A stretch of 64,000 bases of DNA from Mobula hypostoma (lineage: Eukaryota): contig NC_086099.1 in assembly GCF_963921235.1 (NCBI RefSeq), forward strand, positions 87,296,001 to 87,360,000, given 5' to 3'. The first letter of the stretch is position 1, and every line of letters starts with the position of its first letter. A program made the position numbers and the translations under genes. The notes under the pieces were generated by a model. That model was not told the origin of the DNA and made no database searches. It saw only the letters and a program-made list of their open reading frames with translations. Of the stretch, positions 481 through 61,204 are shown piece by piece.

Positions 481-624
481 CTTCTAAGTTTTTTCACTTC
501 TACGGTGTGACAATGTATACTCATACAACAAACAAATGATTCAAGAACATATTGAACTCATTCATATCAATCAAATATCTTTCCCAAAATTTGTCTCCAA
601 TTTACCTTTGAAAACTATACTTAC

Positions 625-740
625 ATGGTCAAAAGTTCCTTCAGTCTTCCAGATATAGAGAAGTCAAATGCTTCCCCTGCTTTTGTGAACTGAACAGGTT
701 CATCCACTTTCCCTCCCTCATATACACCAAGAACCAGGCC
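625..740 (-). CDS. LAP3: cytosol aminopeptidase (leucine aminopeptidase 3), exon 2
   Basis: 116-nt exon between tag| acceptor (741-742) and |gtaagt donor (623-624). Translates GLVLGVYEGGKVDEPVQFTKAGEAFDFSISGRLKELLT, matching human LAP3 GLVLGIYSKEKEDDVPQFTSAGENFDKLLAGKLRETLN. Later exons are beyond the left edge. Confidence 0.95.
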
Positions 741-1083
741 CTACAGAAAAATGACATCAAGAAAAAATATTAAACACAATATACTTCAAAAGCTGCTTTA
801 ATGGATTTGTTTTGCCTCAATTATATGTAAATTAAAATTTTCAACATAAACTCAAAAAATTCTGCAGATGCTGGAAATCTTGAACAATGCACACAAAATG
901 CTGGAGAAACCCAGCACGTCAGACAGCATCCATGGAGGGGAATAAACAGTCAACATTTCAGGCACATCAGTCACAGTCACATTGTGTGAGTTGCTGCTTC
1001 ATACACGTTACATGCTCCACTATTAATATGTACATTTTGTCCAACATTGTGAGAAAATCCTAAAAACTATTCCCTCAGTATTT

Positions 1084-2562
1084 AAAAACGCAATCAACAG
1101 GAATTCTGCAGATGCTGGAAATTCAAGCAACACACATAAAAGTTGCTGGTGAACGCAGCAGGCCAGGCAGCATCTGTAGGAAGAGGTGCAGTCGACGTTT
1201 CAGGCCGAGACCCTTCGTCAGGACTAACTGAAGGAAGAGTGAGTAAGGGATATGAAAGTTGGAGGGGGAGGGGGAGATCCAAAATGATAGGAGAAGACAG
1301 GAGGGGGAAGGATGGAGCCAAGAGCTGGACAGGTGATAGGCAAAAGGGATACGAGAGGATCATGGGACAGGAGGTCCGGGAAGAAAGACAAGGGGGGGGG
1401 GACCCAGAGGATGGGCAAGGGGTATATTCAGAGGGACAGAGGGAGAAAAAGGAGAGTGAGAGAAAGAATGTGTGTATAAAAATAAGTAACAGATGGGGTA
1501 CGAGGGGGAGGTGGGGCATATGCGGAAGTTAGAGAAGTCGATGTTCATGCCATCAGGTTGGAGGCTACCCAGACGGAATATAAGGTGTTGTTCCTCCAAC
1601 CCGAGTGTGGCTTCATCTTTACAGTAGAGGAGGCCGTGGATAGACATGTCAGAATGGGAATGGGATGTGGATTTAAAATGTGTGGCCAGTGGGAGATCCT
1701 GCTTTCTCTGGCGGACAGAGCGTAGGTGTTCAGCAAAGCGGTCTCCCAGTCTGCATCGGGTCTCACCAATATATAAAAGGCCACATCGGGAGCACCAGAC
1801 GCAGTATATCACCCCAGCCGACTCACAGGTGAAGTGTTGCCTTACCTGGAAGGACTGTTTGGGGCCCTGAATGGTGGTAAGGGAGGAAGTGTAAGGGCAT
1901 GTGTAGCACTTGTTCCACTTACACGGATAAGTGTCAGGAGGGAGATCAGTGGGGAAGGATGGGGTGGACGAATGGACAAGGGAGTTGTGTAGGGAGCGAT
2001 CCCTGCGGAATGCAGAGGGGGGGGAGGGAAAGATGTGCTTAGTGGTGGGATCCCGTTGGAGGCGGCGGAAGTTACGGAGAATAATATGTTGGACCCAGAG
2101 GCTGGTGGGGTGGTAGGTGAGGACCAGGGGAACCCTATTCCTAGTGGGGTGGTGGGAGGATGGAGTGAGAGCAGATGTACGTGAAATGGGGGAGATGCGT
2201 TTAAGAGCAGAGTTGATAGTGGAGGAAGGGAAGCCCCTTTCTTTAAAAAAGGAAGACATCTCCCTCGTCCTAGAATGAAAAGCCTCATCCTGAGAGAAGA
2301 TGCGGCGGAGACGGAGGAATTGCGAGAAGGGGATGACAGGGTGAGAAGAGGAATAGTCCAGATAGCTGTGAGTCAGTAGGCTTATAGTAGACATCAACAG
2401 ATAAGCTGTCTCCAGAGACAGAGACAGAAAGATCTAGAAAGGGGAGGGAGGTGTCGAAAATGGACCAGGTAAACTTGAGGGCAGGGTGAAAGTTGGAGGC
2501 AAAGTTAATAAAGTCAACGAGCTCTGCATGCGTGCAGGAAGCAGCGCCAATGCAGTCGTCAG
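1084..2562 (-). mobile_element. Penelope-like retroelement, 5'-truncated (RT C-terminus/thumb + GIY-YIG endonuclease + terminal repeat)
   Basis: ORF 1360-2397 contains CESAGVIYCVWCSRCGLLYIGETRCRLGDRFAEH (GIY-YIG). ORF 2285-2761 contains DDCIGAAS...PFLDLSV...VYYKPTDS. 12-bp TSD ccctcagtattt at 1072-1083 and 2563-2574. Confidence 0.92.
1189..1230 (-). ncRNA. minimal type I hammerhead ribozyme (Penelope terminal repeat), sense within LAP3 intron 1
   Basis: Minus strand reads agtc-CTGACGA-agggtctcggcct-GAAA-CG-TC-gact: intact core, stem I agtc/gact, stem II, palindromic ACGT stem III. Confidence 0.8.
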
Positions 2563-3099
2563 CCCTCAGTATTTGCTGCCTTTTGTTCTCTCTCTGCTCC
2601 TCAATCACTGAATCGCGATCTTGATTTTCACATCTAACACTAACTTTTACAATAGTAAAACTCTGACAATGACTTAACCAATTGCTCGGAAATCCTGATG
2701 ATTTGGCATCTGGTTGACTTACTAGCTCAGAATGTGTCACAGTCCAGAGCACAAGCACCATTTGGAGCCAGTGCTGAGAGTCTGGAGTGTAGATGGCGTC
2801 TGGTCAGTGGCTAGGTGCATGGCAAAGTTGGCATCAGCTCTAAAACACCAGGGGTCAGGAACAAATAGATATGCTACAGGAGCCAGGATCCGGAGTGCTG
2901 TGCACTCTCTTTAAACTCAACAAGTTCACTGGTAAATTTACTGCACTACTGTGTTTCTTGTAGCAGGAAGTGAAAGCAAAGTATATTGTGTATTAATAGA
3001 GTTAAGATACAGTAGTCCAGAAATTTGGGCTGACCACTCAAGTCCCAGGGATACTACATTATCACTTTTACTGCACTGCCTTTAATCATCCTGCAAACA

Positions 3100-4405: not shown

Positions 4406-5422
4406 GAGTTGCGAGAAGGGGATGGCATTTTTGCAAGAGACAGGGCGAGAAGAGGAATAGTCCAGATAGCTGTGAGAGTCAGTAGGCTAATAGTAGACAT
4501 CAGTAGTTTCCCACCACTAAGCACATCTTTCCCTCTCCCCCCTCTGCTTTCCGCAGGGATCGCTCCCTAAGCCACTCCCTTGTCCATTCGTCCCCCCCAT
4601 CCCTCCCCACTGATCTCCCTCCTGGCACTTATCCTTGTAAGTGGAACAAGTGCTACACATGCCCTTAAACTTCCTCCCTTACCACCATTCAGGGCCCCAG
4701 ACAGTCCTTCCAGGTGAGGCAACACTTCACCTGTGAGTCAGCTGGGGTGATATACTGCGTCCGGTGCTCCTGATGTGGCCTTCTATATATCGGCGAGACC
4801 CGGCACAGACTGGGAGATCGTTTTGCTGAACACCTGCACCCTGTCCGCCAGAGAAAGCAGGATCTCCCAGTGGCCACATATTTTAATTCCATATCCCATT
4901 CCCATTCTGACATGTCTATCCACGGCCTCCTCTACTGTAAAGATGAAGCCACACTCAGGTTGGAGGAACAACACCTTATATTCCACCTGGGTAGCCTCCA
5001 ACCTGATGGCATGAACATTGACTTCTCTAACTTCCGCTAATGCTCCACCTCCCCCTCGTACCCCATCCATTATTTATTTATATACACACATTCTTTCTCT
5101 CGCTCCTTTTTCTCCCTCTGTCCCTCTGACTATACCCCTTGCCCATCCTCTGGGTCCCCCCCCCTCCCTTTTCCTTCTTCCCGGACCTCCTGTCCCATGA
5201 TCCTCTCGTATCCCTTTTGCCTATCACCTGTCCAGCTCTTGGCTCCATCCCTCCCCCTCCTGTCTTCTCCTATCATTTTGGATCTCCCCCTCCCCCTCTC
5301 AAATCTCTTACTAGCTCTTCCTTCAGTTAGTCCTGACGAAGGGTCTCGGCCTGAAACGTCGACTGTACCTCTTCCTACAGATGCTGCCTGGCCTGCTGCG
5401 TTCACCAGCAACTTTGATGTGT
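4406..5422 (+). mobile_element. Penelope-like element with an inverted 5' segment
   Basis: About 4509-5422 is the reverse complement of about 1130-2050 (GIY-YIG + terminal repeat). 4406-4506 is an antisense piece from further 5' in the element, matching 2320-2400 in the same orientation. Confidence 0.9.
5324..5365 (+). ncRNA. minimal hammerhead ribozyme
   Basis: agtc CTGACGA agggtctcggcct GAAA CG TC gact. Predicted cleavage after C5360. Confidence 0.8.
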
Positions 5423-5872
5423 ATTGCGGAAATTGTTTAGGCTCCAGTTGAGAATCTGCCTCAATCCCAGACAACACAGAAATAACAGCTAGGGCTTCCC
5501 CATTAAAGCACAGGCTCAAGATTTTTTTTTCCAAAAGAACTTTGTCGGTATAAAATAACATTACAAAACAATCCCGGTGATAGAATCTCTAAATCATCCG
5601 GAGATTTAAGTAGTTTATCTGAAAGAGACAACTGTCCCATTTTGTGTGACTGGATGCAGTGAAGGGGCGAGATAGGACGTTCTGCAGAGACAATTACCAG
5701 GCTCCGAGGAAAGAGCGGGGATTAATTTCAGAGCCAGTGGGATTCTCCTTCACCTCGGGGAGACACCAGAAGGACCAACTATCGGCCAGACACTAACGAC
5801 CCCGCGACCCACCCATTCCTCCGACCCGAAGCACATGGTAAAGTCCGAGCCGCCCCGCCTTGCTCACTGCAC

Positions 5873-5974
5873 CTTGGAGCCGCTATTAGACCGGCAGAAA
5901 CGCAGCGAGTTCCAGCCCAAACCAGCCCGCAAGAGGGAGCGGAACGGCACCTTGCCGCAGACAGCTAGTGACAT
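5873..5974 (-). CDS. LAP3: LAP3 exon 1 (mitochondrial-presequence-like N-terminus)
   Basis: ATG at 5974 with an in-frame TAG 33 nt upstream. The 102 nt encode MSLAVCGKVPFRSLLRAGLGWNSLRFCRSNSGSK (Arg/Ser/Leu-rich, no acidic residues). AAG|gtgcag phase-0 donor joins exon 2 in frame. 34 codons, the same number as precede GLVLG in human LAP3. CpG-rich context. Confidence 0.88.
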
Positions 5975-6030
5975 CTTCAAACGGCAAAGGAGGGAATAGA
6001 TTCGCTATGAACTCGCAACGGGCAGCTGAC

Positions 6031-6205
6031 GCTAACACCGCGGCTTCTCCACTCCCCGAACAGCGCTCCCGACCACCAGCCGACGCTATTACCGCGGCTT
6101 CTCCACTCCCTGAACAGCGCTCCCGACGACCAGCCGACGCTATTACGGCGGCTTCTCCACTCCCTGAACAGCGCTCCCGACGTCCAGCCGACGCTATTAC
6201 CGCGG
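6031..6205. repeat. 54-bp minisatellite, proximal block (3 units + partial)
   Basis: Units start at 6031, 6085, 6139 and 6193 (gctattaccgcggcttctccactccctgaacagcgctcccgacgaccagccgac). Confidence 0.97.
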
Positions 6206-6300
6206 ACAACCGGAATTCTGCAGATGCTGGAAATTCAATCAACACACATAAAAGTTGCTGGTGAACGCAGCAGGCCAAGCAGCATCTATAGGAAGAGGTG

Positions 6301-6342
6301 CAGTCGACGTTTCAGGCCGAGACCCTTCGTCAGGGCTAACTG
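6301..6342 (-). ncRNA. minimal hammerhead ribozyme (left arm of fold-back)
   Basis: Minus strand reads agcc-CTGACGA-agggtctcggcct-GAAA-CGTC-gact. Core intact, one stem I mismatch. Confidence 0.7.
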
Positions 6343-7613
6343 AAGGAAGAGTGAGTAAGGGATTTGAAAGTTGGAGGGGGAGGGGGAGGGGGAGATCCAA
6401 AATGATAGGAGAAGACAGGAGGGGGAGGGATAGAGCCGAGAGCTAGACAGGTGATAGGCAAAAGGGATATGAGAGGATCATGGGACAGGAGGTCCGGGAA
6501 GAAGGAAAAGGGAGGGGGGGACCCAGAGGATGGGCAAGAGGTATATTCAGAGGGACAGAGGGAGAAAAAGGAGAGTGAGAGAAAGAATGTGTGCATAAAA
6601 ATAAGTAACAGATGGGGTACGAGGGGGAGGTGGGGCCTAGCGGAAGTTAGAGAAGTCGATGTTCATGCCAGCAACGGAATATAAGGTGTTTTTCCTCCAA
6701 CCTGAGTGTGACTTCATCTTTACAGTAGAGGAGGCCGTGGATAGACATGTCAGAATGGGAATGGGATGTGGAATTAAAATGTGTGGCCACTGGGAGATCC
6801 TGCTTTCTCTGGCGGACAGAGCGTAGATGTTCAGCAAAGCGGTCTCCCAGTCTGCGTCGGGTCTCGCCAATATATAAAAGGCTACATCGGGAGCACTGGA
6901 CGCAGTATATCACCTCAGTCGACTCACAGGTGAAGTGTTGCTACACATGCCCTTACACTTCCTCCCTTACCACCATTCAGGGCCCCAAACAGTCCTTCCA
7001 GGTGAGGCAACACTTCACCTGTGAGTCGACTGGGGTGATATACTGCATCTGGTGCTCCCGTTGTGGCCTTTTATATATTTGCGAGACCCGACGCAGACTG
7101 GGAGACCGCTTTGCTGAACACCTACGCTCTGTCCGCCAGAGAAAGCAGGATCTCCCAGTGGCCACACATTTTAATTCCACATCCCATTCCCATTCTGACA
7201 TGTCTATCCACGGCCTCCTCTACTGTAAAGATGAAGCCACACTCAGGTTGGAGGAACAACACCTTATATTCCGTCTGGGTAGCCTCCAACCTGATGGCAT
7301 GAACATCGACTTCTCTAACTTACGCTATGCCCCACCTCCCCCTCGTACCCCATCTGTTACTTATTTTTATGCACATATTCTTTCTCTCACTCTCCTTTTT
7401 CTCCCTCTGTCCCTCTGAATATACCTCTTGCCCATCCTCTGGGTCACCCCCCCCCCGTCTTTCTTCCCGGACCTCCTGTCCCATGATCCTCTCGTATCCC
7501 CTTTTGCCTATCACCTGTCCAGCTCTCGGCTCTATCCCTCCCCCTCCTGTCTTCTCCTATCATTTTGGATCTCCCCCCCCTCCCACTTTCAAATCTCTTA
7601 CTCACTCTTCCTT

Positions 7614-7655
7614 CAGTTAGTCCTGACGAAGGGTCTCGGCCTGAAACGTTGACTG
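7614..7655 (+). ncRNA. minimal hammerhead ribozyme (right arm of fold-back)
   Basis: agtc CTGACGA agggtctcggcct GAAA CG TT gact (GUU cleavage triplet). Confidence 0.75.
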
Positions 7656-7715
7656 CGTCTCTTCCTATAGATGCTGCTTGGCCTGCTGCGTTCACCAGCA
7701 ACTTTTATGTGTGTT

Positions 7716-8515
7716 GCTATTACCGCGGCTTCTCCACTCCCTGAACAGCGCTCCTGTCGACCAGCCGACGCTATTACCGCGGGTTCTCCACTCCCTGAAC
7801 AGCGCTCCTGTCGACCAGCCGACGCTATTACCGCGGGTTCTCCACTCCCTGAACAGCGCTCCTGTCGACCAGCCGACGCTATTACCGCGGCTTCTCCACT
7901 CCCTGAACAGCGCTCCTGTCGACCAGCCGACGCTATTACCGCGGGTTCTCCACTCCCTGAACAGCGCTCCCGACGTCCAGCCGACGCTATTACCGCGGCT
8001 TCTCCACTCCCTGAACAGCGCTCCTGTCGACCAGCCGACGCTATTACCGCGGCTTCTCCACTCCCTGAACAGCGCTCCTGTCGACCAGCCGACGCTATTA
8101 CCGCGGCTTCTCCACTCCCTGAACAGCGCTCCTGTCGACCAGCCGACGCTATTACCGCGGCTTCTCCACTCCCTGAACAGCGCTCCTGTCGACCAGCCGA
8201 CGCTATTACCGCGGGTTCTCCACTCCCTGAACAGCGCTCCTGTCGACCAGCCGACGCTATTACCGCGGCTTCTCCACTCCCTGAACAGCGCTCCTGTCGA
8301 CCAGCCGACGCTATTACCGCGGCTTCTCCACTCCCTGAACAGCGCTCCTGTCGACCAGCCGACGCTATTACCGCGGCTTCTCCACTCCCTGAACAGCGCT
8401 CCTGTCGACCAGCCGACGCTATTACCGCGGCTTCTCCACTCCCTGAACAGCGCTCCTGTCGACCAGCCGACGCTATTACCGCGGGTTCTTGACTCCCCGA
8501 CCAGCGCTCCCGACA
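7716..8515. repeat. 54-bp minisatellite, distal block (14 full units + 1 degenerate)
   Basis: Exact 54-bp period from 7716 to 8472. Variants ggct/gggt and cctgtcga/cccgacgt. It explains the repetitive ORFs 7613-8659, 7671-8492 and 7678-8523. Confidence 0.98.
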
Positions 8516-8647
8516 GATATTGACCTCAGTGATCTGGAGGAAGGAACTAATGGCATTAGAGGCAAATTTGTAAACGATACAAAGTAAGTTGAGGAACACG
8601 TAGAATTGCGGAGGTAGGGAACTGCAGAAGAACATGTTAAAATAAGT

Positions 8648-10785
8648 CCATAATACCATAAGACATAAGAGCAGAATTAGGCCATGAGGCCCACTGAGTC
8701 TGCTTCAATCATGGCTGATCCTTTTATCCCCTCCTCAGTCCCACTTCCTGGCCTTCACCCCATAAACTTTGATGCCATGTCCAATCAAGAAGCTATCAAG
8801 ATCTGCCTTAAATACACCTAACGACCTGGCCTCCACAGCTGCCCATGGTAATAAATTCCACAAGTGCATGACCATGCATTTTCCAACATTTGGCACTCTC
8901 TTGCCCATTCTCCGAATCTGCCTAAGTCCTTCTGCAGCCTACCTGTTTCCTCGACACTACCTGCCCCTCTACCAATCTTTGTATCATCTGCAAACTTGGC
9001 AACAAAGCCATCTATTCCATCATCTTGATCATTTATATACAGCATAGAAAGAAATGGCCCCAACATCGACCCCTGCGAAACACTACTAGTCACTGGCAGC
9101 CAACCAGACAAGGATCCTTTTATTCCCTCTCACTGCCTCCTACCAATCAGCCAATGCTCTAACCATGCCAGTAATTTTCCTGTAATACCATCGGCTCTTG
9201 ATAAGCAGCCTCCTATGGGGAACCTTGTCCAAGGCCTTCTGAAAGTCCAGATATACTTCCCTCACAGCCTTCAACATCTGGCACACTGCTCGTGTTTTTC
9301 ACAGTAAAGACTGATGGAAAATACTCCATTTAGTTCACTTGCCATCTCCTTGTCCCCTGTTATTATTTCTCCCTCATTTTCTAGCGGTCCTATATCCACT
9401 CTCATCTCTCTTTTATTTTTTCAAACTTGAAAAAGCTTTTATTATTCACTTTGATATTGCTTGCTAGCTTGCTTCCATATTCATCTTTTCCCTACTAATC
9501 ATTCTTTTAGTTGCTCTCTGTAAGTTTTTAAAAGCTTCCCAATCCTCTGTCTTCCCACTGGTTTTTGCTTTATTGTATGCCCTCTTGTATGCTTTTACAT
9601 TAGCTTTGACTTCCCTTGTCTGCCATGGTTGCACTATTTTGCCATTTGAGTATTTCTTTGTTGTTAGAATACGTTTATCCTGCACCTTCCTCATTTTTTT
9701 TCCAGAAACTCACACTGTTGCTGCTCTGCTGTAATCCCTGCCAGCCTCTCCTTCCAATTTACTTTGGCCAACTCCTCTCTCGTACCACAATTATTTCCTT
9801 TACCCCACTGAAATACTGCTATTCAGACTTTACTTTCTCCTTATCAAGTTTCAAGTTGAACTCAGTCATATTATGATCACTGTCTCCTGAGGGATATTTT
9901 ACCTCAAACTTCCTAATTGCCTGTGGTTCATTACATAACACCCAATCCATATCCCCTAGTAGGCTCAATGACAAGCTGCTCTAAAAAGCCATCTCTTCGG
10001 CATTCAACAAACTTAATCTCTTGAGATCCATTATCAACCTGATTTTCCCAATCGACCTGCGTGTTGAAATCTCCCATGATTATCATAACATTGCCTTTCG
10101 ACACACCTTTTCTATTTCTCATTGTAATCTGAGATCCACATGCCAGCTATTGTTGGAAGGCCTGTACTGTATATAACTGCCATCAGGGTCCTTTTACTGT
10201 TGTAGTTTCTTAACTCAGCCCTCAGGGATTCAACATCTTCCATCTTTCCACTGATTTGATGCCATTCTTTACCAGCAGAACCACACTCCCCTCTGCCTAC
10301 CTTCCTATCCCTTTGATACAACATGTAACCTTGAACATTCAGCTCCCAACTACAATCATCCTTCAGCCATGTTTCAGTGATGGCCACAACATCATACCTG
10401 ACAATGCATAATAGTGCATCAAGATATTTCTCCTTATTTCTTATACTCCGTGCATTGAGATGTAACACTTTGAGTACTATATTTGCTACCTATTTTGATT
10501 CTGCAACCCTAATGCACTGCTACTCACAGCAATTTTGTCCTGTCATATACCCACCCTTCCTGACAGTCTTACTGCACACTATCTTTGCTTTTTTACCAAC
10601 CATTCCATCCTGAGTCACTCCAGCTCCTACACCCCCCCCCCGCCAAATTAGTTTAAACCCTCCCCAACAACTCTAACAAACCTGCCCACGAGGATGTAGG
10701 TCCCCCTCGGGTTCAGGTGCAACCTGTCCCTTTTGTACAGGTCATACCTCCCCCAGAAGAGATCCCAATGATCCAAGAACCCAAA
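8648..10785 (-). mobile_element. CR1 LINE, internally deleted (ORF1 esterase end, APE endonuclease, RT, 3' tail)
   Basis: Minus ORFs: HLNARSIRNK...AITETWL and IIMGDFN (APE); VTSSVSQGSMLGP...FADDTKIG (RT); WDLFWGRYDLYKRDRLHLNP (esterase). Tail cttatgtcttatgg at about 8650. Confidence 0.88.
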
Positions 10786-13910: not shown

Positions 13911-15006
13911 TAGTCATAGTCATAGTCATACTTTATTAATCCAGGGAGAAATTGGTTTTCGTTGCAGTTGCTCCATAAATAATAAATAGTAATAGAACCA
14001 TAAATAGTTAAATAGTAATATCTAAATTATGCCAGTAAATTATGAAATAAGTCCAGGACCAGCCTATTGGCTCAGGATGTCTGACCCTCCAAGGGAGGAG
14101 TTGTAAAGTTTGATGGCCACAGGCAGGAATGACTTCCTATGACGCTCAGTGCTGCATCTCGGTGGAATGAGTCTCTGGCTGAATGTACTCCTGTGCCCAC
14201 CCAGTACATTATGTAGTGGATGGGAGACATTGACCAAGATGGCATGCAACTTGGACAGCATCCTCTTTTCAGACACCACCGTGAGAGTGTCCAGTTCCAT
14301 CCCCACAACATCACTGGCCTTACGAATGAGTTTGTTAATTCTGTTGGTGTCTACTACCCTCAGCCTGCTGCCCCAGCATACAACAGCAAATATGATAGCA
14401 CTGGTCACCACAGACTCGGAGAACATCCTCAGCATCGTCTGGCAGATATTAAAGGACCTCGGTCTCCTCAGGAAATAGAGACGGCTCTGACCCTTCTTGT
14501 AGACAGCCTCAGTGTTCTTTGACTAGTCCAGTTTATTGTCAATTTGTATCCCCAGGTATTTGTAATCCTCCACCACGTCCACACTGACCTCCTGAATGGA
14601 AACAGGGGACACCGGTAGCTCTCCTCAGGTCTACCACCAGCTCCTTAGTCTTTTTCACATTAAGCTGCAGATAATTCTGCTCACACCATGTGACAAAGTT
14701 TCCTACCGTAGCCCTGTACTCAACCTCATCTCCCTTGCTGATGCATCCGACTATGGCAGAGTCATCCGAAAACTTCTGAAGGTGACAAGACTCTGTGCAG
14801 TAGTTGAAGTCCGAGGTGTAAATGGTGAAGAGAAAGGGAGACAAGACAGTCCCCTGTGGAGCCCCAGTGCTGCTGATCACTCTGTCGGACACACAGTGTT
14901 GCAAGCACACGTACTGTGGTCTGCCAGTCAGGTAATCAAGAATCCATGACAGCAGGGAAGCATCCACCTGCATCGCTGTCAGCTTCTCCCCCAGCAGAGC
15001 AGGGCA
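13911..15006 (-). mobile_element. Rex1/Babar LINE 3' fragment nested in Gypsy pol
   Basis: STGAPQGTVLSPFLFTIYT...KFSDDSAIVG RT; C-terminal HPLHNVL...RLIPPRCSTERHRKSFLP; (gactat)n tail at 13911-13930. Confidence 0.9.
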
Positions 15007-16579
15007 GATGGTGTATAGGAACTGGACCAACTTTGCAAAACTTAGGTATGACATTTTAATTTGCACTATTTTACCTTGGATATGTTTGAGTTTTTCAATG
15101 CCATTATTGAACACTGCTACCGTTTCTTCCAGCACCTTTCTTAATTTGCTTTCAGTTGACTCCATTGCAGGGAGTGTGGCATGCAAATAGTTGATGGATA
15201 TCCAATCAAGTTGCAGTTGTCTCAGCCAATTGTGACCCTAGGATGCTGGCCCTCCTGTTTTGACCACATACAAACTCAGTGTGGCTTGTTGGTTGTTGAG
15301 TTTTACTGTTAAAATTGTCATTCCCAAAGGAGTTATTTTCTCCAGTTTGAGTCTTTAGTTGGATATCTTCAAGCTTCAGTTCAGTGTCAATGAAACACCA
15401 TTCAAACTCATTTTGTGGAATGACTAAAACAACTGAGCCAGTGATCAATCCAATTTCAATTAATTTGCCATTCACTTCTGGTGTAAACCATATTGCTTGA
15501 TTCCTGTTAGTTTTCAGATTCTATATCTCAAAGGTACCTAGTCCTGTGTCACTCTCATTATTATCATATTTTTCAACATTAGTTCTCTTTTTGAAATTGC
15601 AACTTGACTTTTTATCTTTTTCTCTTTCCTGCACAGTCCATTTATTTTTGTCTGCCTGACCTTATATTTGTCCTTCTTTGTTGCATTTTCTGCAAATTTC
15701 ACCTTTAAATCTGCATTAAATCTGGTGGATCTGACCCTCCCCCACCCCAGCACAATGGTAACACAATTTGTTCAGCCAGACAGGTTTCTGTTTAGATATT
15801 CTAATTTCGTTCATGCTCACTTTCTTTGCTGACTGCAACTCAATTGCATATCTGTCTGCAATTTCCATTGATAAACTAATTTCACCTCTCTTTTAAAAGT
15901 GGGTTGCGCTTCAGTTAGGGATCATTTTTAAATGCTTTCTTGTAAGATTTCACAAACTAAATGATCTCTCAGTGCATCATTAATCCCATCACTGAACTGA
16001 CAGTGCTCAGGCAAACTCCTCAATTTAGCCACGTAAGCTGAAATGGTCTCCCCTTACTTTTTGATTCTGCTTATGAAATCTAAGACGTTCTGCATTAACA
16101 GTGGTTTTGGTTCTAAATGTTCCTGTATTACTTTCATGATATCAGCAAAGCTCCTTTCAGCTGGTTTGGTTGGAGCAGTTAAACTTCTAAGAAAACTGCA
16201 TCTCTTCCACCAATTACACTCAGTAAAACTGGCACTCACTTTTCATTGGCTACTTAATTTACTTTAAAATACTGCTCAATTCACTCAGTATACATATTCC
16301 AGGTATGGGTCATGTTATCAAACACTTCTATCTTTCCAATGTAGCCAGCCATTTCTGCTTTTTTTATTTATGATTATTATCACCTAGTACTGGTTGTTTA
16401 TGAACCTGTAAATTTTGACTGTTTTCTGCCTTTTACACTAACTCGACCAACTCTCTCCTTTTTCAAAAAAACATGCTGTGCTTAACTGTTACCCTCCTCT
16501 TGCAAAGAAAAAAATTGTATGGCACTTCAACAGGTTAAGTAGTCACCTTGGATTAATTTTAAAACTTACTCATCACCTC

Positions 16580-18216: not shown

Positions 18217-21200
18217 GAGGGAATGATAAACGGGTTCAAAGGGTTTAGATCAGTGAGGGAAAATATACACTCCAACATTGCTGCAGGGTATTTTATTAGA
18301 GTGATAGGTGATTTATTGTAAGTGATAGGAAAAGGAAGCATAAAATATATAAAACACTGTCTAAAACAATGCGTAAAATAATTAACAAAACATGTCCGCC
18401 TCCGTCCGCTACGTAATGGTAAGAATTGACAAAACAACAAGTCTAAAACAGAGTGCAGAGTAATTAATACAGCAGCAAGGCTCACACAATTTTCTACCCA
18501 TTGAGGACTCCAACTTATGATGACTGGCCTGGAAACTGTTAGGTATCTTTGGCATCGATCACAATTCTGGTCCGTGGACAAAAGTCTGAAGAGCTTGCTC
18601 ACTGTTAACACTTATACAATCAAGAAAGCTTACACTTCTTTTCTAACCTATGCATTCCAAGGTGCTGCAATGCTAAAATTAATTATGTCTTAATGAGAGA
18701 TTTATAGGGAAGATTCTATGTTCCCACCAGAACTAGTCTCACTGTTTCCAAAAAATCTTGTCAGTCAAGACTTTACTTTGACAACTGCAATGCTCATCCT
18801 TGAAAAAGAAACCAAGTTATCCCATTCCCTTGGCGGCTTACATCAGTCTAGGCACTTGACAAGGTCCCACATGGGAGGTTGATCAAGAAGGTTCAGTTGC
18901 TCAGCATTCAGGATGAAGTGAATTGGATTAAACATTGTCTTTGTGGCAGAAGCTCAAGAGTGGTAGTGGAGTGTTGCCTTTCCGACTGGAGGCCTGTGCC
19001 TAGCGATGTGCTCAAGGGATCAGTGCTGGTCCTTTATTGTTTGTCATCTATACAGTATCAATGAACTGGATAATAATGTGGTTCACTGGATCAGCAAATT
19101 TGTGGATGACACCAAGATTAGGGGTGTAGTGGACAGTGAGGAAGACTATCATGGCTTGCAGAAGGATCTGCATCGTCTGGAAAACTGGGCTAAAGAAATG
19201 ACAAATAGAATTTAATGCAGACAGTGCGAGGTTTGGTACTTCAGTAAGAGCAACCAGGGTAGGTCTTACACAGTGAACGGTAGGTACTATGGAGTGCAGT
19301 TAAACAAAGGGATCTGGGAATACAAGTCTATAATTTGTTGAAAGTGGCATCACAGGCAGGTAGGGTCATAAAGAAAGGTTTGGCACACAGTGGCGTATCT
19401 AAGGTATGGCACGTGCCCTGGGCGCCACTTGAAGGGGGGCTCCACTGAGCAGTTTCTATTAAAGTCAGACAAGCCATCCTCGGATAGTGAAAAAGGAATT
19501 TTCTTCAGATGTATGATCTGCCTTTGATTATCATGGGTGAGAAGCACTAGGATGCCTTATTTCAGAGCATTGTATAAGAAGACCATGAAACATTTCTTCA
19601 CGAAGAAGAAGGAAAGTGGAGCTGAACGATGGAAGAGACGAAAGTTGAAGGCGGAGGAAGCCAAGTATTCGAGCAAGTTCTTCATGCCCTTCTTTGCAAA
19701 GCCCGGAACAAGTAGTTCGACACATTCCATAGAGTCGCCTGCATCTGCTACAAGTTTGTTAGAATCCGAAGGTGGATCAAGTACAAATGCGTCACAAGTC
19801 GAGGAGGAAGTCAAGTCAGATAAACCTGAGTATGACGAGATTAAGAGTGAGGCTGCCACAGAGAATGTGGACATGACAGGAGGGGAAGACGATGGTGGTG
19901 GTGGTGATGTTGAGTTTATTGACGAGATTTTACTTGATGAGATTTTACCTGACGACACTGAACCTAGTGAACTGGATGGTGTCAAAGAGCCTCGAACTGT
20001 CATAACAGAAGTGATTGAACAGCATGACATTGGACTTCTGAAGTTCGACAAGGATACTGGAAAAACAATTCTGCCTGATGCGTTGAGAACAGAAATAATA
20101 AAACTGGGTTCAAAGTATTTTCAGAACAGTGAGGGACCTTTCCTACTAACAAATAACCACTCAATGAATAAAACTTGGTACAAGAGGAAATTGGGAAATG
20201 ATCATGGTGAGGAAGTGACTCACCCATGGCTGGTCTATTCCCCTTCTAAAAAGTCTACATTTTGTATCTGTTGTCTTCTCTATTTCCGGTCAGACCATCA
20301 ATCCTCATTGGAACAGGAAGGTGGATTCAACCAGTGGAAAGCACCTGAAAGGATTAGTGTTCATGAAAGTGCCAGGAATCATCGGGAACTCTTCACACAG
20401 TGGAAAGAAATGGAAAGAAATTTAGCTGGAAACAGAGGAGTTATTGACACGGTATTTCAGTCACAGATTGAGAAGGAAAAGCAGAAGTGGCGTGATATCT
20501 TGACGAGAATCCTTCACTGCATAAAATTCCTTGTGACTCAGAACCTGGCTTTGTGAGGACACAGGGAGTCACTTCAGCTAGACAATGACTCCAATGTGGG
20601 AAATTTCCTTGGCTTACTGAAACTACTGGCCATCTTTGACCCTGTCATAAAAGAGCACCTCACTCATTTGGAAAGTCATCTTGGATCCACGTCTTATCTT
20701 TCACCAGGTGTCCAGAATGAATTCATCCACATGATGGCATCCACTGTTTGCCAGAGTTTACTAAGAAGCATTCGTAAAGCCAAGTACTCATGTTCGACCC
20801 GACTCCTGATCAGGCACACCGTGAGCAGATGTCAGAAGTAGTGAGGTATGTGGAAGTTGATTTTGAGAGGAAAACAGTCCGTGTTAGAGAGTCCTTCCTT
20901 GGTTTTATCCAGATAAGCCAGAAGGATGCTGAGAGCTTGGTTGAAGACATCTTGAAACAGCTAGAGAAGGACGAAGTGGAGCTACAAGATTGTCGGTCAC
21001 AGTGCTATGACAATGCTGCTGTGATGGCTGGACACAGAAGTGGTGTTCATCAAAGAATAAGTGAGAAAAACAACCTGGCAGTGTTTGTGAATTGCGACAA
21101 TCACTCATTCAACTTGGTGGGTGTACATGCAGCCAAGCAGGATTACAATGATGGTCACATTTTTTGGAACAATCAAAGCTCTCTACTGTTTTTCCCTTGT

Positions 21201-22055
21201 TCAACAGCGCTGGGAAAAACTCAAAAATGCCGTGCCTGTGGTTGTTAAGTCGGAGTCCAAAACCAGGTGGAGTGCAAGGACAGAAGCAGTGAAGCCCGTC
21301 AACAAGTACCTTGAGGAGATACTTCAAGTTCTCCAGGACATGATAGACAATGAAAACGAGACCATTGAAACAAGAAGTGATGCAAGGCAGCTGTACAACT
21401 GCATGTTGGGTTACGATTTTCTGATTTTGCTAGGATTTTGGAACAAAGTACTCATTCGCATTGACCGTATTCAAAAGAGGCTGCAGGATCCTAGGATGAA
21501 CTTCCACGATGCTGCCCTGGATTTGAAAGCCATCCAAGATCATTTTTATGATGAAAGAGAAGTGTTGGGCAGTGAGTCACTCGAAGAAGTCAGTTTTTGT
21601 CAAAAATGGAATATTGAAGTTGAAATACATCAGAGACAAAAGAAACAAATGGCTGATGAGAACTCGAGCGATGCTGAGTTAACAGCTAAGGAGGAAATGG
21701 AAAGAGTCACAAAGGGAACACTCGATCGACTTCACAGAGAAATGGACGAAAGGTTTGCTCGTTTGCATGACACTGATGCCAAGTTTGGCTTCCTTCTCAA
21801 TGTCGAGGGACGTGTTACAGCGCCGACAGTAACAACCTAAAGAAGAAGTGTGAAAATTTGGGTGAATTGTACAGCTCTGATGTTGATGGACAGCAGCTAT
21901 ATCAGACATCCCACCTCTCCCGGAAGTTCCGGGAGTCTCCTGCATATCGATAGTGGCTCCCTGACGCCTGGAAATTATATACAATATCCCGGAAATAGAT
22001 TTTTTTGAGAGGAAGAGGGAGAGCGAGCATCCTGATTGGTCTCTCTTCATGCTAA

Positions 22056-50020: not shown

Positions 50021-50879
50021 AATTCCACAGAGCTTTATTTGACTGGATCCAGGTGTTCAAATTTTATTCAGAAGCCAGTGATGAGTGTGGATTGTTTGTT
50101 CTGGGCCGATGATTATCCTTTCACCGGTATATCTGAGTCAATTTATTTATTGAGATACTGCACAGAATAGCCCTTTAAGCCATGCCGCCCAGCAACCGCC
50201 CGATTTAATCCCAGCCTAATCACAGGAAAATTTACAATGACCAATTTACTACCAACTAGTGCGTTTTTGGATTGTGGGAGGAAACCAGAGCTCCAGAGGA
50301 AACCACCACCCACAAATCCTACAGGCAGAGGTGGGAAATGAACTAGCGTCTCTGGTACTTTAAAACATTGTGCTAACCACTACGCTGTCATGCCACCCTT
50401 TTCTGAAGGCTGCTTCATTAGCAGCTTGATATGTACTAATCTGTAGTGTTACCACATTCCTGACTCTGCAACAGTGACTGCTTTTAATGAAAATATTTCA
50501 TTAACAATTGAACTTTGGGACATTTTGAAAAGATTGTAAAAGATGTTATCTAAATTCAAAGTTTTCTTTGTATTCTGTTGTAACCCAATTTGAAAAATAA
50601 AGTATTTTTTATGATATGAAATGCAGGTTCCCTTTTTTGGTTTATTAAGAAAATACGTGGTAGGCACTGAGAGTGGTGATTGATTCTCCTGTTCTGTGGT
50701 GCTGGTTATTTTCGGGCCGGGCAGCATCTATGGGAAAAAGTTCAATCGACGTTTCCATTAATGCTGCCTAGCCTGCTGAGTTCCTCCAGCATTCTGTGCG
50801 TGTTGCTCAGATGTCCAGCATCTGCAGATTTCTCTTGTCTTGTTTGCTGGTCGTTTCCAGTTTAGTTTTGTGTAGAGGT

Positions 50880-59416: not shown

Positions 59417-60413
59417 GTAAGTATCAAGTCCACCCTGAACATGCTAATATTCCCTGTCCCATTTCGGGAGAAAATTACTGTTATCTCTCACAAAGCACTT
59501 GGCATTAATTGTCAGTTGATTGAACTGATGCATGGTGTGCTAGCAATATGCATCTTGAAATTTAGAATAAAATATTTAAAGTTAAATACTTCAATATTTC
59601 AGTCCTGTTTAAATAAGCTTTTTGTCTGTGTTTTATGTGTTATTCCACATTTCTGTAAGACTGTTGTATTTGTGCAAAAAGAATTTATTTTCTGTCATAT
59701 CACATCCTTGGGATTTGGACATGTCTCTGTTTTGTCTGCTGATTAACTTCTATCATTTCCTTCTAACCCTCTGGGGTAATGAACATATTAAGTCTCTTCT
59801 AATCTATCATTACTGTGTTCACTCTTATAATCATTTTGGTTGTTGCTGCTGGCTCAAGGCTATTGCTTTTTTAATAATCGTAGGATTTTTCTCTCTATGC
59901 CAAAATTTTCCTGCATCCTATGTCATGCCTACCCATCCCATTGTGTTTGTTCACGTATGTTGTCTGCCAGAGTTTCACATTTAATATCCTCAGTCTTAAA
60001 TTCATAATTCTCTCCTGCGAAGTGTTTTCTGATGCTTAACACAAATGTTATATAGATGTAATTTCTTGATATTTTTCATGGTAGTGAGATCTCTCCTTTG
60101 CCCTCCTCTGTCCTGGCATCTCCCTAAACTTCCTTGCCTTTTAACCTCTCTCTCAATTGAGTCATCTCCTGTCGTGTGTGTGACTGATTATCCACTTTTG
60201 ATTATATATCTGTAAAGCATTTTGAAATGATAGTTTCATTTGCAACAGATTTCTGTTCCAGTCCTGGAATGTTCATGTTACTTGTGGATGTGACATTTTC
60301 TGGTGATTGACTTAATAATTGTCTTACTGTTTACTGCAAGTATTCAATGTACTCTTACTTCAATAAACTGACTGCTAGATATTAATTACTAAAAGCTGCT
60401 TTAAAAGAACAAA

Positions 60414-60568
60414 CATACATAAAGGTTGCTGGTGAACGCAGCAGGCCAGGCAGCATCAATAGGAAGAGGTACAGTCGATGTTTCGGGCCGAGACCCTTCG
60501 TCAGGACTAACTGAAAGAAGAGATAGTAAGAGATTTGAGAGGGGGAGGGGGAGATCCAAAATGATAGG
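60414..60568 (-). mobile_element. 155-bp Penelope terminal fragment containing the hammerhead (60472-60513)
   Basis: Matches about 1134-1291. 11-bp TSD aaaagaacaaa at 60403-60413 and 60569-60579. Confidence 0.88.
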
Positions 60569-61204
60569 AAAAGAACAAAGTTTATTTCACTCATTAGTAA
60601 CCAGAGTTAGTAAAAAAAACTGCAGAAACCTGAAATAAAATATTCAATAGGTGAGGCAGCATTATGGCACTGTAGTATAGCGGTTAGTGTAACACTTTAC
60701 AATGCCAGCTGTAAGATTAGAATTCACTTCCCATCTGTCTGTAAGCAGTTCGTACGCTCTCCCCATAACCGCATGGGTTTCTTCCGCGTAATATGGTTTC
60801 CTCCCACATTCCAAAAGCGTCTGGTAAGGATTAGTGAGTTGTGCGCCTCTGTGTTGGTGCTGTAAGTGTGGCGATACACTGGGCTATCCAGCACAATCAT
60901 CGCTGATTTGATGTGACACAAACAATGCTTTTCACTGTATGCTTTTACGTGAGACAAATAAAGATCATCCTCTCATATCCTCTTATCCATTTACGCAGAG
61001 GAAAACAGTTAATATTTGAGGTCAGTGATGTTTTCTGGAACAGTTCTGTTGAAAGATTATCAGCCTTAAACTGGCTGAGTGTTCCAACAATTTCTATTTT
61101 AATTTCATTTTACTCTTTTCTGCTTTTGCCTTTCTTAAACTGAACACTATACATCGCTTAACCACACACTTTAGAAATATTTTATAATGTTATCATGCAC
61201 AATC

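What the first reader, a model, noticed from the sequence alone, without database searches (positions are those of the whole stretch)
6031..8515. LAP3 promoter built from a minisatellite split by a fold-back, double-hammerhead Penelope insertion
Seen in sequence: a 1.5-kb insertion with about 700-bp inverted arms and a 65-nt loop sits 232 bp upstream of the LAP3 ATG, inside a 54-bp array. The repeat phase steps back 10-13 bp across the insertion, which is TSD-like. Both arms share variants absent from the copies at 1084 and 4406 (ggccaagc, ctatag, gatagagccgag, gcaagagg), pointing to a single template-switch event or to arm-to-arm conversion. Each arm ends in a hammerhead, one per strand. Established: Penelope-like elements form inverted terminal structures and carry minimal hammerheads. 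Inference: any transcript from the distal repeats toward LAP3, or a promoter-antisense RNA, would form a long dsRNA hairpin and meet a ribozyme in either direction. This could act as a bidirectional barrier, an siRNA source or a cruciform at a housekeeping promoter.
Basis: partly seen in the sequence, partly recalled or inferred. Interest (0 to 1): 0.72.

Follow-up and report, generated by a model that had tools for sequence, protein, structure and literature searches.

The report
Penelope hairpin insertion upstream of LAP3
A dead, two-armed copy of a very abundant Penelope-like jumping gene sits in a CpG-rich 54-base repeat array just upstream of the devil-ray LAP3 gene; the layout is real, but it is the standard published shape of such insertions and nothing shows it regulates the gene.

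Summary
A 54-bp array (6023-6205 and 7716-8510) is split by a 1,510-bp insertion (6206-7715). The insertion is two 5'-truncated 3' ends of a Penelope-like element (PLE) joined head-to-head. It lies 232 bp upstream of the LAP3 ATG (A at 5974, minus strand).

- A perfect 13-bp target duplication flanks it. Removing the insertion plus one duplicate restores a 54/54 repeat unit.
- Each arm carries a minimal-hammerhead-like motif on its own strand.
- The arms share 7 variants absent from two other copies in the window.

Four papers describe this architecture for PLEs: head-to-head inverted truncated copies, a 30-40-bp tail at one end only, a variable target duplication, and hammerheads on opposite strands. 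One PLE protein cuts and extends both DNA strands in vitro. Earlier notes of this scan list many such fold-backs in this genome.

The functional ideas (ribozyme barrier, siRNA source, cruciform) are untested, and the barrier idea is unlikely:
- Rfam finds no hammerhead.
- Helix II closes with G·U.
- The monomer does not fold as a hammerhead.
- In a read-through RNA the motif is buried in a roughly 700-bp duplex.

Only short public contigs were available, and none listed spans a junction. Contigs of a run guessed to be RNA suggest the proximal array lies in LAP3's transcribed 5' region. Ordinary; low interest.

The parts
624..740 (-). LAP3 coding exon 2 (GLVLGVYEGG...), preceded by an AG acceptor
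   Evidence: It matches residues 3-40 of bovine lens leucine aminopeptidase, E 1.2e-5. The reading frame and acceptor were read.
5873..5974 (-). LAP3 exon 1 coding part: 34 codons, a presequence-like N-terminus, with the donor AAG|GT at 5873|5872
   Evidence: Read directly from the sequence. In run X9, which the tool guesses to be RNA, a contig break falls exactly at 5872-5901, as expected for a spliced versus unspliced branch. The DNA run X1 has no break there.
5975..6022 (-). 48 bp between the ATG and the first array unit; part of the candidate 5' UTR
   Evidence: The minus strand has no upstream ATG from 6205 down to 5975.
6023..6205 (.). Proximal block of the 54-bp minisatellite: 3.4 units that differ from one another, CpG observed/expected 1.39
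   Evidence: X9 contigs lie on 5872-6123 and 6094-6177.
6193..6205 (.). Left copy of the target-site duplication, GCTATTACCGCGG
   Evidence: identical to 7716-7728.
6206..6240 (-). 35-nt PLE 'tail', present on the left arm only. Copy A near 1094-1128 also has it.
   Evidence: Alignment and sequences. A tail at one end only is described in PMC8557442 and PMC3846280, and explained as the stretch between two reverse-transcription start sites in PMC11167929.
6241..6941 (-). Left arm: a 5'-truncated PLE 3' end holding the GIY-YIG endonuclease coding remnant (with a 17-bp deletion) and the 3' region
   Evidence: Pfam GIY-YIG E 1.7e-4, 22.3 bits, just under the 22.6-bit cut-off.
6301..6338 (-). Minimal-hammerhead-like motif of the left arm. 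Predicted cut is after C at 6306. Helix I has one C·A mismatch.
   Evidence: Pattern match, alignment. No Rfam hit.
6939..6941 (.). Head-to-head joint of the two truncated copies, with a 2-3-nt microhomology (TGC)
   Evidence: Both arms aligned to copy A: element coordinates 1461-2206 and 1393-2175.
6939..7715 (+). Right arm: a 5'-truncated PLE 3' end with no tail. It is about 68 nt longer at its 5' side than the left arm, which accounts for the 'loop'.
   Evidence: Pfam GIY-YIG E 2.4e-3, below the cut-off.
7618..7655 (+). Minimal-hammerhead-like motif of the right arm. Helix I is 5 bp. The cleavage triplet is GUU, with the predicted cut after 7650.
   Evidence: No Rfam hit.
7716..7728 (.). 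Right copy of the target-site duplication
7716..8510 (.). Distal block of the minisatellite: 14.7 nearly identical units, mostly a CCTGTCGAC variant not seen in the proximal block, CpG observed/expected 1.27

Best explanation
This is one old, dead insertion of an abundant devil-ray Penelope-like element (PLE), in the class's standard 'inverted pair' form.

Inferred mechanism:
1. The element's GIY-YIG endonuclease nicked both strands of a CpG-rich 54-bp minisatellite 13 bp apart.
2. Each 3' end primed reverse transcription of PLE RNA.
3. One cDNA started at the distal start site, giving the left arm its 35-nt tail. The other started at the proximal site, giving a right arm with no tail.
4. Both cDNAs stopped after about 0.7-0.78 kb and were joined head-to-head at a 2-3-nt microhomology.
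5. Filling in of the staggered nicks gave the 13-bp duplication.

The hammerhead-like motifs are in both arms only because every PLE 3' end carries one.

The insertion pushed about 15 repeat units 1.5 kb away from LAP3. The proximal 3.4 units stayed next to exon 1, where they probably lie in the gene's transcribed 5' region or core promoter. The insertion is most likely tolerated baggage, not a regulatory device.

Shown here: the anatomy, the target duplication, the element's identity and the kinship of the arms. Inferred: the two-strand priming mechanism and the lack of function.
For: Anatomy:
- Array and arms.
- Both arms align to copy A over element coordinates 1461-2206 and 1393-2175, in opposite orientation.
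- 13/13 target duplication, and a 54/54 restored unit when the insertion is removed.
- Tail on one arm only.

Identity as a PLE:
- GIY-YIG matches in both arms and in copy A, E 1.7e-4 to 2.8e-3, below the Pfam cut-off.
[quoted passage not shown] This was read directly from the translations.
- The nearest Atlas clusters carry GIY-YIG, HTH_animal or a reverse-transcriptase name, score 0.96.
- The hammerhead motif gives 4 hits against 0 expected.

One event:
- A single target duplication encloses both arms.
- The arms are sister copies: 7 versus 3 versus 1 informative sites, p = 0.039.

Published precedent:
- Inverted 5'-truncated copy, a 30-40-bp tail often at one end only, and assembly trouble (PMC8557442).
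- Inverted pLTRs with a 31-bp tail and 8-10-bp target duplications; head-to-head is the most frequent form (PMC3846280).
- Dual minimal hammerheads on opposite strands 100-700 bp apart (PMC4209133).

Abundance: contigs of the family pile up enormously on the arms in three ray DNA runs and in a run guessed to be RNA.

Local precedent: copy B also has an inverted piece at its 5' end, 4439-4502.

Against a technical fold-back artefact: the arms differ at 27 of 691 aligned sites and carry arm-specific indels.
Against: - No read or contig spanning a junction could be shown. Only short Logan contigs were available.
- A search with a 61-mer across the left junction (4 sampled words) listed no run, not even the DNA runs that hold 69% of the locus words.
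- The arms are no closer to each other than to copy A. They could therefore come from two different RNAs of one subfamily rather than from one template.
- Two-strand priming has been shown in vitro only for an Anolis element, not for this family.
- 'No function' is a default, not a result. The insertion sits 232 bp from a housekeeping ATG inside a CpG-island-like array. The outward-facing end of the left arm points at LAP3.
Confidence: 0.82

Rival explanations
1. Co-option as a promoter. The left arm points its 3' end, which in a tandem element would be the next unit's pLTR with the hammerhead and the PLE ORF start, toward LAP3. It would supply a start site or an alternative first-exon sequence, so some LAP3 mRNAs would begin inside the PLE.
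For: - pLTRs of PLEs carry promoters or start sites in Drosophila, rotifers and Chlamydomonas (PMC2377424; PMC3846280; PMC8557442).
- X9 contigs reach 6177, only 29 nt from the PLE tail. They end there for a repeat-graph reason: the 30-mer at 6148-6177 recurs at 6094.
- The left arm is correctly oriented.
Against: - No contig was shown to cross 6205/6206, and no run was listed for the junction 61-mer.
- Transcripts starting upstream of 6285 or 6249 would carry upstream ATGs, whereas the stretch from 6205 down to 5975 has none.
- CpG-island-like arrays are sufficient candidates for a start site by themselves.
- X9's identity as RNA, and the strand of its contigs, are not established.
Confidence: 0.08
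2. One reading: the 0.7-kb inverted arms act as a bidirectional transcription barrier through the ribozymes, as a hairpin source of siRNA, or as a cruciform at the promoter.
For: - A read-through RNA would fold into a long hairpin of -1382 kcal/mol.
- Rotifer PLE inverted structures show small-RNA profiles that switch polarity (PMC3846280).
- The motif core is intact on each strand.
Against: - There is a single sense hammerhead per transcript direction. Minimal hammerheads need a dimer or protein (PMC4209133; PMC11167929).
- Positions 10.1-11.1 are G·U, there is no Rfam hit, and the monomers do not adopt the fold.
- The motif is sequestered in the hairpin.
- A 49-57-nt spacer and about 4% arm divergence disfavour cruciform extrusion. 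This rests on established knowledge of inverted-repeat stability, recalled and not tested here.
- The family has an enormous number of copies, so one locus is not needed as a small-RNA source.
- No small-RNA, stranded RNA or methylation data were available.
Confidence: 0.05
3. Assembly artefact, or a structure private to one haplotype: the fold-back or its placement in the array is a mis-join of repeats.
For: - PLE tandem and inverted structures are known to trouble assemblies (PMC8557442).
- No listed contig bridges a junction.
- No run was listed for the left-junction words.
- The DNA run X1 and run X9 both lack 8 bp at 5849 relative to the window, so they may not be the assembled haplotype.
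Against: - A technical fold-back would give identical arms. These differ at 27 sites, by a 17-bp deletion, by other indels and by a one-sided tail.
- The flanks form a perfect 13-bp duplication in repeat phase.
- The layout matches the element's published biology.
Confidence: 0.04
4. Two independent PLE insertions that happen to abut head-to-head.
For: The arms are as far from each other as from copy A, and the family is very abundant.
Against: One target duplication encloses the pair and none lies at the inner joint. The inner joint is a microhomology between two truncation points. The arms share 7 derived sites.
Confidence: 0.02

Closest known systems
Canonical endonuclease-positive Penelope-like element insertions with inverted pLTRs or an inverted 5'-truncated partner (Penelope/Poseidon type; PMC8557442, PMC3846280, PMC2377424)
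   Same: Head-to-head inverted copies, strong 5' truncation, a 30-40-bp tail at one end only, a short variable target duplication, a C-terminal GIY-YIG endonuclease with cysteines between GIY and YIG, and a hammerhead motif near each outer end.
   Different: Both members here are truncated, with no full ORF or direct pLTR pair. The arms are long (0.7-0.78 kb) compared with the 200-250-bp mini fold-backs noted elsewhere in this genome. The target is a 54-bp CpG-rich minisatellite rather than the AT-rich sites or microsatellites reported for other families.
Minimal hammerhead ribozymes of metazoan PLEs (Cervera and De la Pena 2014, PMC4209133)
   Same: CUGANGA and GAAA cores, an extra unpaired base before helix II, palindromic CG at 15.2-16.2 with no helix III loop, a 4-5-bp helix I, a location near the element's end, and occurrence as dual motifs on opposite strands.
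   Different: Helix II is short (about 4 bp) and closes with G·U instead of the conserved G10.1-C11.1. There is no Rfam hit. Activity is untested.
Two-strand target-primed reverse transcription by the Anolis PLE protein PAc (Frangieh et al. 2024, PMC11167929), and L1 twin priming as an analogy (recalled from memory)
   Same: Both target strands are used as primers. There are two alternative internal reverse-transcription start sites, and the interval between them is the tail. The result is inverted cDNAs inside one target duplication.
   Different: PAc prefers 5'-ATT-3' sites. Here the inferred nicks lie after ...CCGCGG on the plus strand and after ...AATAGC on the minus strand. The mechanism is inferred from the product for this ray family.
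CpG-island promoters that contain tandem repeats, with transposable-element insertions nearby
   Same: A GC-rich, CpG-rich repeat block abuts exon 1 of a housekeeping gene.
   Different: No start site or methylation data exist here, so the promoter role of the repeats is not shown.

Membership tests
Penelope-like element (endonuclease-positive, canonical) | [quoted passage not shown] | tested here: met
   The translations read ...VIYC.WCSRCGLLYIGETRRRLGDRFAEHL... in both arms and in copies A and B. Pfam GIY-YIG E 1.7e-4 to 2.8e-3, 18.4-22.3 bits against a cut-off of 22.6, so it is below Pfam's own threshold. Atlas neighbours carry GIY-YIG.
Penelope-like element (endonuclease-positive, canonical) | Telomerase-related reverse-transcriptase domain upstream of the endonuclease | not tested
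   Both arms are 5'-truncated within or just before the endonuclease region. Copy A reaches only an ...ADDCIGA... remnant, and Pfam gave no hit on 2288-2803.
Penelope-like element (endonuclease-positive, canonical) | Inverted and/or tandem arrangement of 5'-truncated copies within one target duplication | tested here: met
Penelope-like element (endonuclease-positive, canonical) | [quoted passage not shown] | tested here: met
   35 nt at 6206-6240 on the left arm only. The same tail is on copy A and is absent from B and from the right arm.
PLE minimal hammerhead | Catalytic core C3-U4-G5-A6-N7-G8-A9 ... G12-A13-A14, an A15.1-U16.1 pair, and H17 | tested here: met
   CUGACGA ... GAAA-CGU-U/C in both arms. 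The pattern gives 4 hits against 0 expected in the window.
PLE minimal hammerhead | [quoted passage not shown] | tested here: met
   There is an extra A after CUGACGA, and C15.2-G16.2 reads CG. The criteria are taken from PMC4209133.
PLE minimal hammerhead | Conserved G10.1-C11.1 pair and a stable helix II | tested here: not met
   Helix II is GGGU/GCCU and closes with G·U, about 4 bp. This holds in all four copies in the window.
PLE minimal hammerhead | Recognition by curated hammerhead covariance models, or folding as a hammerhead | tested here: not met
   No Rfam hammerhead hit at gathering score or at E <= 10. The minimum-energy folds of 55-nt windows form a different hairpin, z about 0. 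This is expected for dimer-dependent minimal motifs, so it does not exclude the class.
PLE minimal hammerhead | Self-cleavage | not testable with these tools
   Needs in vitro transcription of monomer and dimer constructs.
LAP3 / M17 leucine aminopeptidase gene | Coding sequence homologous to cytosol or leucine aminopeptidase | tested here: met
   Only the N-terminal exon is in the window: 624-740 (-) against bovine LAP residues 3-40, E 1.2e-5. The rest of the gene lies outside the window.
CpG-island promoter | GC above 50% and CpG observed/expected above 0.6 over at least 200 bp at the 5' end of a gene | tested here: met
   Exon 1 region 0.97, proximal array 1.39, distal array 1.27, against 0.34 for the window.
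CpG-island promoter | Mapped transcription start site | tested here: inconclusive
   Contigs of a run guessed to be RNA cover 5430-6177, with a break at the exon-1 donor. Contigs cannot show starts or strand.

The most novel reading that the evidence does not exclude
The outward-facing end of the left arm (hammerhead, PLE ORF start and tail, pointing at LAP3) has been co-opted as a start site or upstream promoter module of a housekeeping gene. Alternatively, read-through from the distal repeats makes a 0.7-kb hairpin RNA at this promoter that feeds small-RNA silencing of the very abundant PLE family.
Probability: 0.08. Interest if true: 0.5.

Novelty: new member of a known kind. Interest (0 to 1): 0.15.

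Why it matters
As it stands, little. It is one more well-preserved example of the published Penelope 'inverted pair with a one-sided tail' insertion.

It does have some use as a record of the integration mechanism. The perfect 13-bp duplication in a phased repeat, the tail on one arm only and the microhomology joint fit the recent in vitro finding that a PLE protein primes from both strands at two start sites.

It would matter more if LAP3 start sites mapped into the element, or if the hairpin produced small RNAs. That would be a case of a PLE end being used by, or interfering with, a housekeeping promoter in a cartilaginous fish.

Tried and rejected
- **Rfam.** The whole window at gathering score and 6150-7780 at E <= 10 gave no hammerhead. 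The only hits were spurious miRNA-like matches caused by the central palindrome (MIR4228, mir-587), all far below their gathering scores.
- **First pattern search.** It had the wrong spacer length and found nothing. The corrected pattern was run.
- **Folding 55-nt hammerhead windows.** No hammerhead fold, z about 0.
- **Read laying on 5430-8900 with four runs.** Only short Logan contigs were laid. The family's copies swamp the arms, no listed piece spans a junction, and the tables are truncated. The assembly, the presence of the insertion in the sister species and transcription of the arms therefore could not be tested.
- **The look-up of sequencing runs on the left-junction 61-mer.** It failed once because the tool was busy. 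The repeat had 4 sampled words and no run was listed. This is inconclusive, not evidence of absence.
- **Arm-to-arm gene conversion.** Rejected, because the arms are no more alike than either is to copy A.
- **CpG decay as a methylation read-out.** Only 3 of 22 arm-private changes are CpG transitions, too few to interpret. In that script a majority string of the four aligned 3' fragments was used in memory only, to count CpG sites. It was neither printed nor saved.
- **Long ORFs across the array** (7613-8659 -, 7671-8492 +, 7678-8523 +). They are mechanical products of an 18-codon repeat without stops, not genes.
- **Pfam on large ORFs farther upstream.** Only transposable-element relics were found.
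Full report
**Observation.**

- Tandem Repeats Finder reports a 54-bp array at 6023-6205 (3.4 units, 93% matches) and again at 7716-8510 (14.7 units, 97%).
- Between the two blocks lie 1,510 bp (6206-7715). Their two halves are reverse complements of each other, in collinear blocks of 58-276 nt at 88-96%.
- On the minus strand an ATG (A at 5974) opens a 34-codon exon that ends at a GT donor (5873|5872).
- A second exon at 624-740 (-) translates to GLVLGVYEGGKVDEPVQFTKAGEAF... It matches residues 3-40 of bovine leucine aminopeptidase, E 1.2e-5. The gene is therefore LAP3, and the insertion begins 232 bp upstream of its ATG.

**What the insertion is.**

Blastn and a four-way alignment show that both halves are 3' ends of the same repeat family. 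That family has two other copies in LAP3 intron 1: copy A at about 1094-2620 (-) and copy B at 4439-5427 (+).

The family encodes a C-terminal GIY-YIG endonuclease.
- Pfam E-values are 1.7e-4 to 2.8e-3, just under the curated cut-off.
[quoted passage not shown] This is the Penelope-like element (PLE) hallmark named in PMC8557442.
- The nearest Atlas clusters carry GIY-YIG, HTH_animal or a reverse-transcriptase name.

The geometry of the two arms is as follows.
- In element coordinates of copy A, the left arm covers 1461-2206 on the minus strand. The right arm covers 1393-2175 on the plus strand.
- The two copies are therefore both 5'-truncated and joined head-to-head at 6939-6941, through a 2-3-nt microhomology.
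- The 'loop' is the roughly 57 nt by which the right arm is longer.
- The left arm runs 35 nt further at its 3' end (6206-6240). Copy A has the same extension. Copy B and the right arm lack it.

GCTATTACCGCGG flanks the whole unit on both sides (6193-6205 and 7716-7728). Joining 6205 to 7729 recreates a perfect 54/54 repeat unit.

**Hammerheads.**

The string CUGACGA-N13-GAAACGUYGAC occurs once in each arm, on that arm's sense strand (6303-6333 minus, 7623-7653 plus), and once each in copies A and B. None is expected by chance.

Judged against the published description of PLE minimal hammerheads (PMC4209133):
- Fits: the core, the extra unpaired base before helix II, the palindromic CG in place of helix III, and a 5-bp helix I. 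In the left arm only 4 of the 5 helix I positions pair.
- Does not fit: helix II is short and closes with G·U rather than G-C.
- Rfam finds no hammerhead even at E <= 10.
- 55-nt windows fold into a different hairpin with no excess stability.

I therefore call these hammerhead-like motifs of the PLE minimal class. Their activity is unknown.

**Kinship of the arms.**

- Over 691 aligned sites the arms differ at 27 (96.1% identity). That is the same distance as either arm from copy A.
- Informative sites favour the arms as sisters: 7, against 3 and 1 for the alternatives, binomial p = 0.039.
- The shared sites are spread along the whole arm. Each arm has 11 private changes plus its own indels, including a 17-bp deletion in the left arm's endonuclease remnant.
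- This fits one source RNA or subfamily followed by independent decay. It does not fit ongoing arm-to-arm conversion, and it rules out a technical fold-back artefact, which would give identical arms.

**Comparison with the literature.**

The architecture is already described.
- Craig et al. [quoted passage not shown]
- Arkhipova et al. 2013 (PMC3846280): inverted pLTRs with a 31-bp tail and 8-10-bp target duplications; head-to-head is the most frequent arrangement.
- Cervera and De la Pena 2014: dual minimal hammerheads 100-700 bp apart on opposite strands.
- Frangieh et al. 2024 (PMC11167929): the purified Anolis PLE protein cleaves and extends both target strands and initiates at two internal sites, and the interval between those sites is the tail.

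Applied here, the plus-strand 3' end at 6205 primed the left arm from the distal start site. The minus-strand 3' end at 7716 primed the right arm from the proximal start site. The 13-nt stagger between the nicks became the duplication. This mechanism is inferred from the product, not shown for this family.

Earlier notes of this scan list many PLE fold-backs with one-sided tails and 14-15-bp duplications in this same devil-ray genome. Their follow-ups called them ordinary. I used those notes only as leads, and my own tests agree with them.

**Reads.**

All available runs are kept as short Logan contigs.
- The family's copies swamp the arms, and no listed piece bridges 6205/6206, 6941 or 7715/7716.
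- A 61-mer across the left junction had 4 sampled words and no run was listed.
- The assembly is therefore not independently confirmed.

Some useful points do emerge.
- A second species (organism B) has the left flank with the array start (5584-6089, 14 differences in 506). It also has pieces of the distal array and its outer edge (7995-8057, 8460-8560).
- The DNA contig of X1 ends at 6104. That is exactly where a 30-mer shared with the distal array is completed.
- The X9 contig passes that point. It breaks instead at 5872-5901, the exon-1 donor. Exon 2 begins with the same G as the intron, which accounts for the one-base offset. It breaks again at the repeat internal to the proximal array.
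- X9 therefore behaves like RNA in which exon 1 and the proximal array, out to at least 6177, are present and the distal array is not evident.
- This suggests, but does not prove, that the proximal array lies in LAP3's transcribed 5' region. Contigs give neither strand nor start sites.
- The minus strand has no ATG between 6205 and the LAP3 ATG. The PLE arm has two, at 6285 and 6249.

**Promoter context.**

- CpG observed/expected is 1.39 in the proximal array and 1.27 in the distal array, and 0.97 around exon 1.
- It is 0.49-0.54 in the arms and 0.34 for the window.
- The arrays are thus CpG-island-like, and the insertion is a CpG-poor patch within them.
- The distal units are nearly identical and mostly carry a variant (CCTGTCGAC) not seen in the proximal units. 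A later expansion or homogenisation of that block would explain this, but the order of events was not tested.

**Function.**

The whole insert folds as an RNA into a hairpin of about 700 bp, at -1382 kcal/mol, with the hammerhead motif base-paired to its complement.

The 'ribozyme barrier in either direction' idea is unlikely for four reasons:
- Each direction carries a single sense motif.
- Published minimal hammerheads depend on a dimer or on protein.
- Helix II here closes with G·U.
- The motif would be sequestered in the duplex.

A cruciform is disfavoured by the 49-57-nt spacer and about 4% arm divergence. This rests on general knowledge and was not tested here. The siRNA and co-option ideas remain possible but have no evidence here.

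**Verdict.**

The structure is an ordinary PLE inverted-pair insertion. Its position in a repeat-built CpG island next to LAP3 is a mildly interesting setting. No evidence makes it a regulatory device.

Noticed in passing
window 4439-4502 (-) next to 4509-5427 (+): PLE copy B in LAP3 intron 1 also has an inverted piece at its 5' end. It is only 64 nt long and comes from an internal part of the element (coordinates 905-966 of copy A), not from the 3' end. This is a different kind of inversion from the pair upstream of LAP3.
   Followed up: partly
window 7619/7620 (element position just 5' of hammerhead helix I): In the contigs of the ray DNA runs X1 and X5 (organisms A and B), many joints have a fixed right side at 7619/7620 and variable left sides in the inverted arm (6237, 6247, 6323, 6332). 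Many copies elsewhere in these genomes therefore seem to start right at the edge of the hammerhead and are joined to an inverted partner (table 5).
   Followed up: no
window 5849: Contigs of the DNA run X1 and of run X9 both lack 8 bp present in the window, 24 nt into LAP3 intron 1. This is either an indel allele or a small assembly difference.
   Followed up: no
window 858-930 (-), 50761-50832 (+), 60412-60574 (-): Short, more diverged fragments (80-89% identity) of the PLE 3' terminus. The two at 858-930 and 50761-50832 also cover the tail; the one at 60412-60574 stops at about the tail's start. They are solo tails of older insertions.
   Followed up: no
window 7933-7986: One unit of the distal array carries the CCCGACGTC variant of the last proximal unit (6139-6192). 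All its neighbours carry CCTGTCGAC. It may be a relic of the array as it was before the distal block became uniform.
   Followed up: no
window 8562-8900 and beyond; 14539-15186 (-); 20790-21248 (+): The DNA upstream of the distal array is repeat-rich. Contig pile-ups begin at about 8562. There is an RVT_1 reverse-transcriptase remnant (E 2.1e-10) and a weak DUF4371 match, below its cut-off. No neighbouring divergent gene was seen near the array.
   Followed up: partly
window 6889-7061: Rfam miRNA models (MIR4228, mir-587, MIR167) give sub-threshold hits on the central palindrome. These are artefacts of the inverted joint, not miRNA genes.
   Followed up: yes
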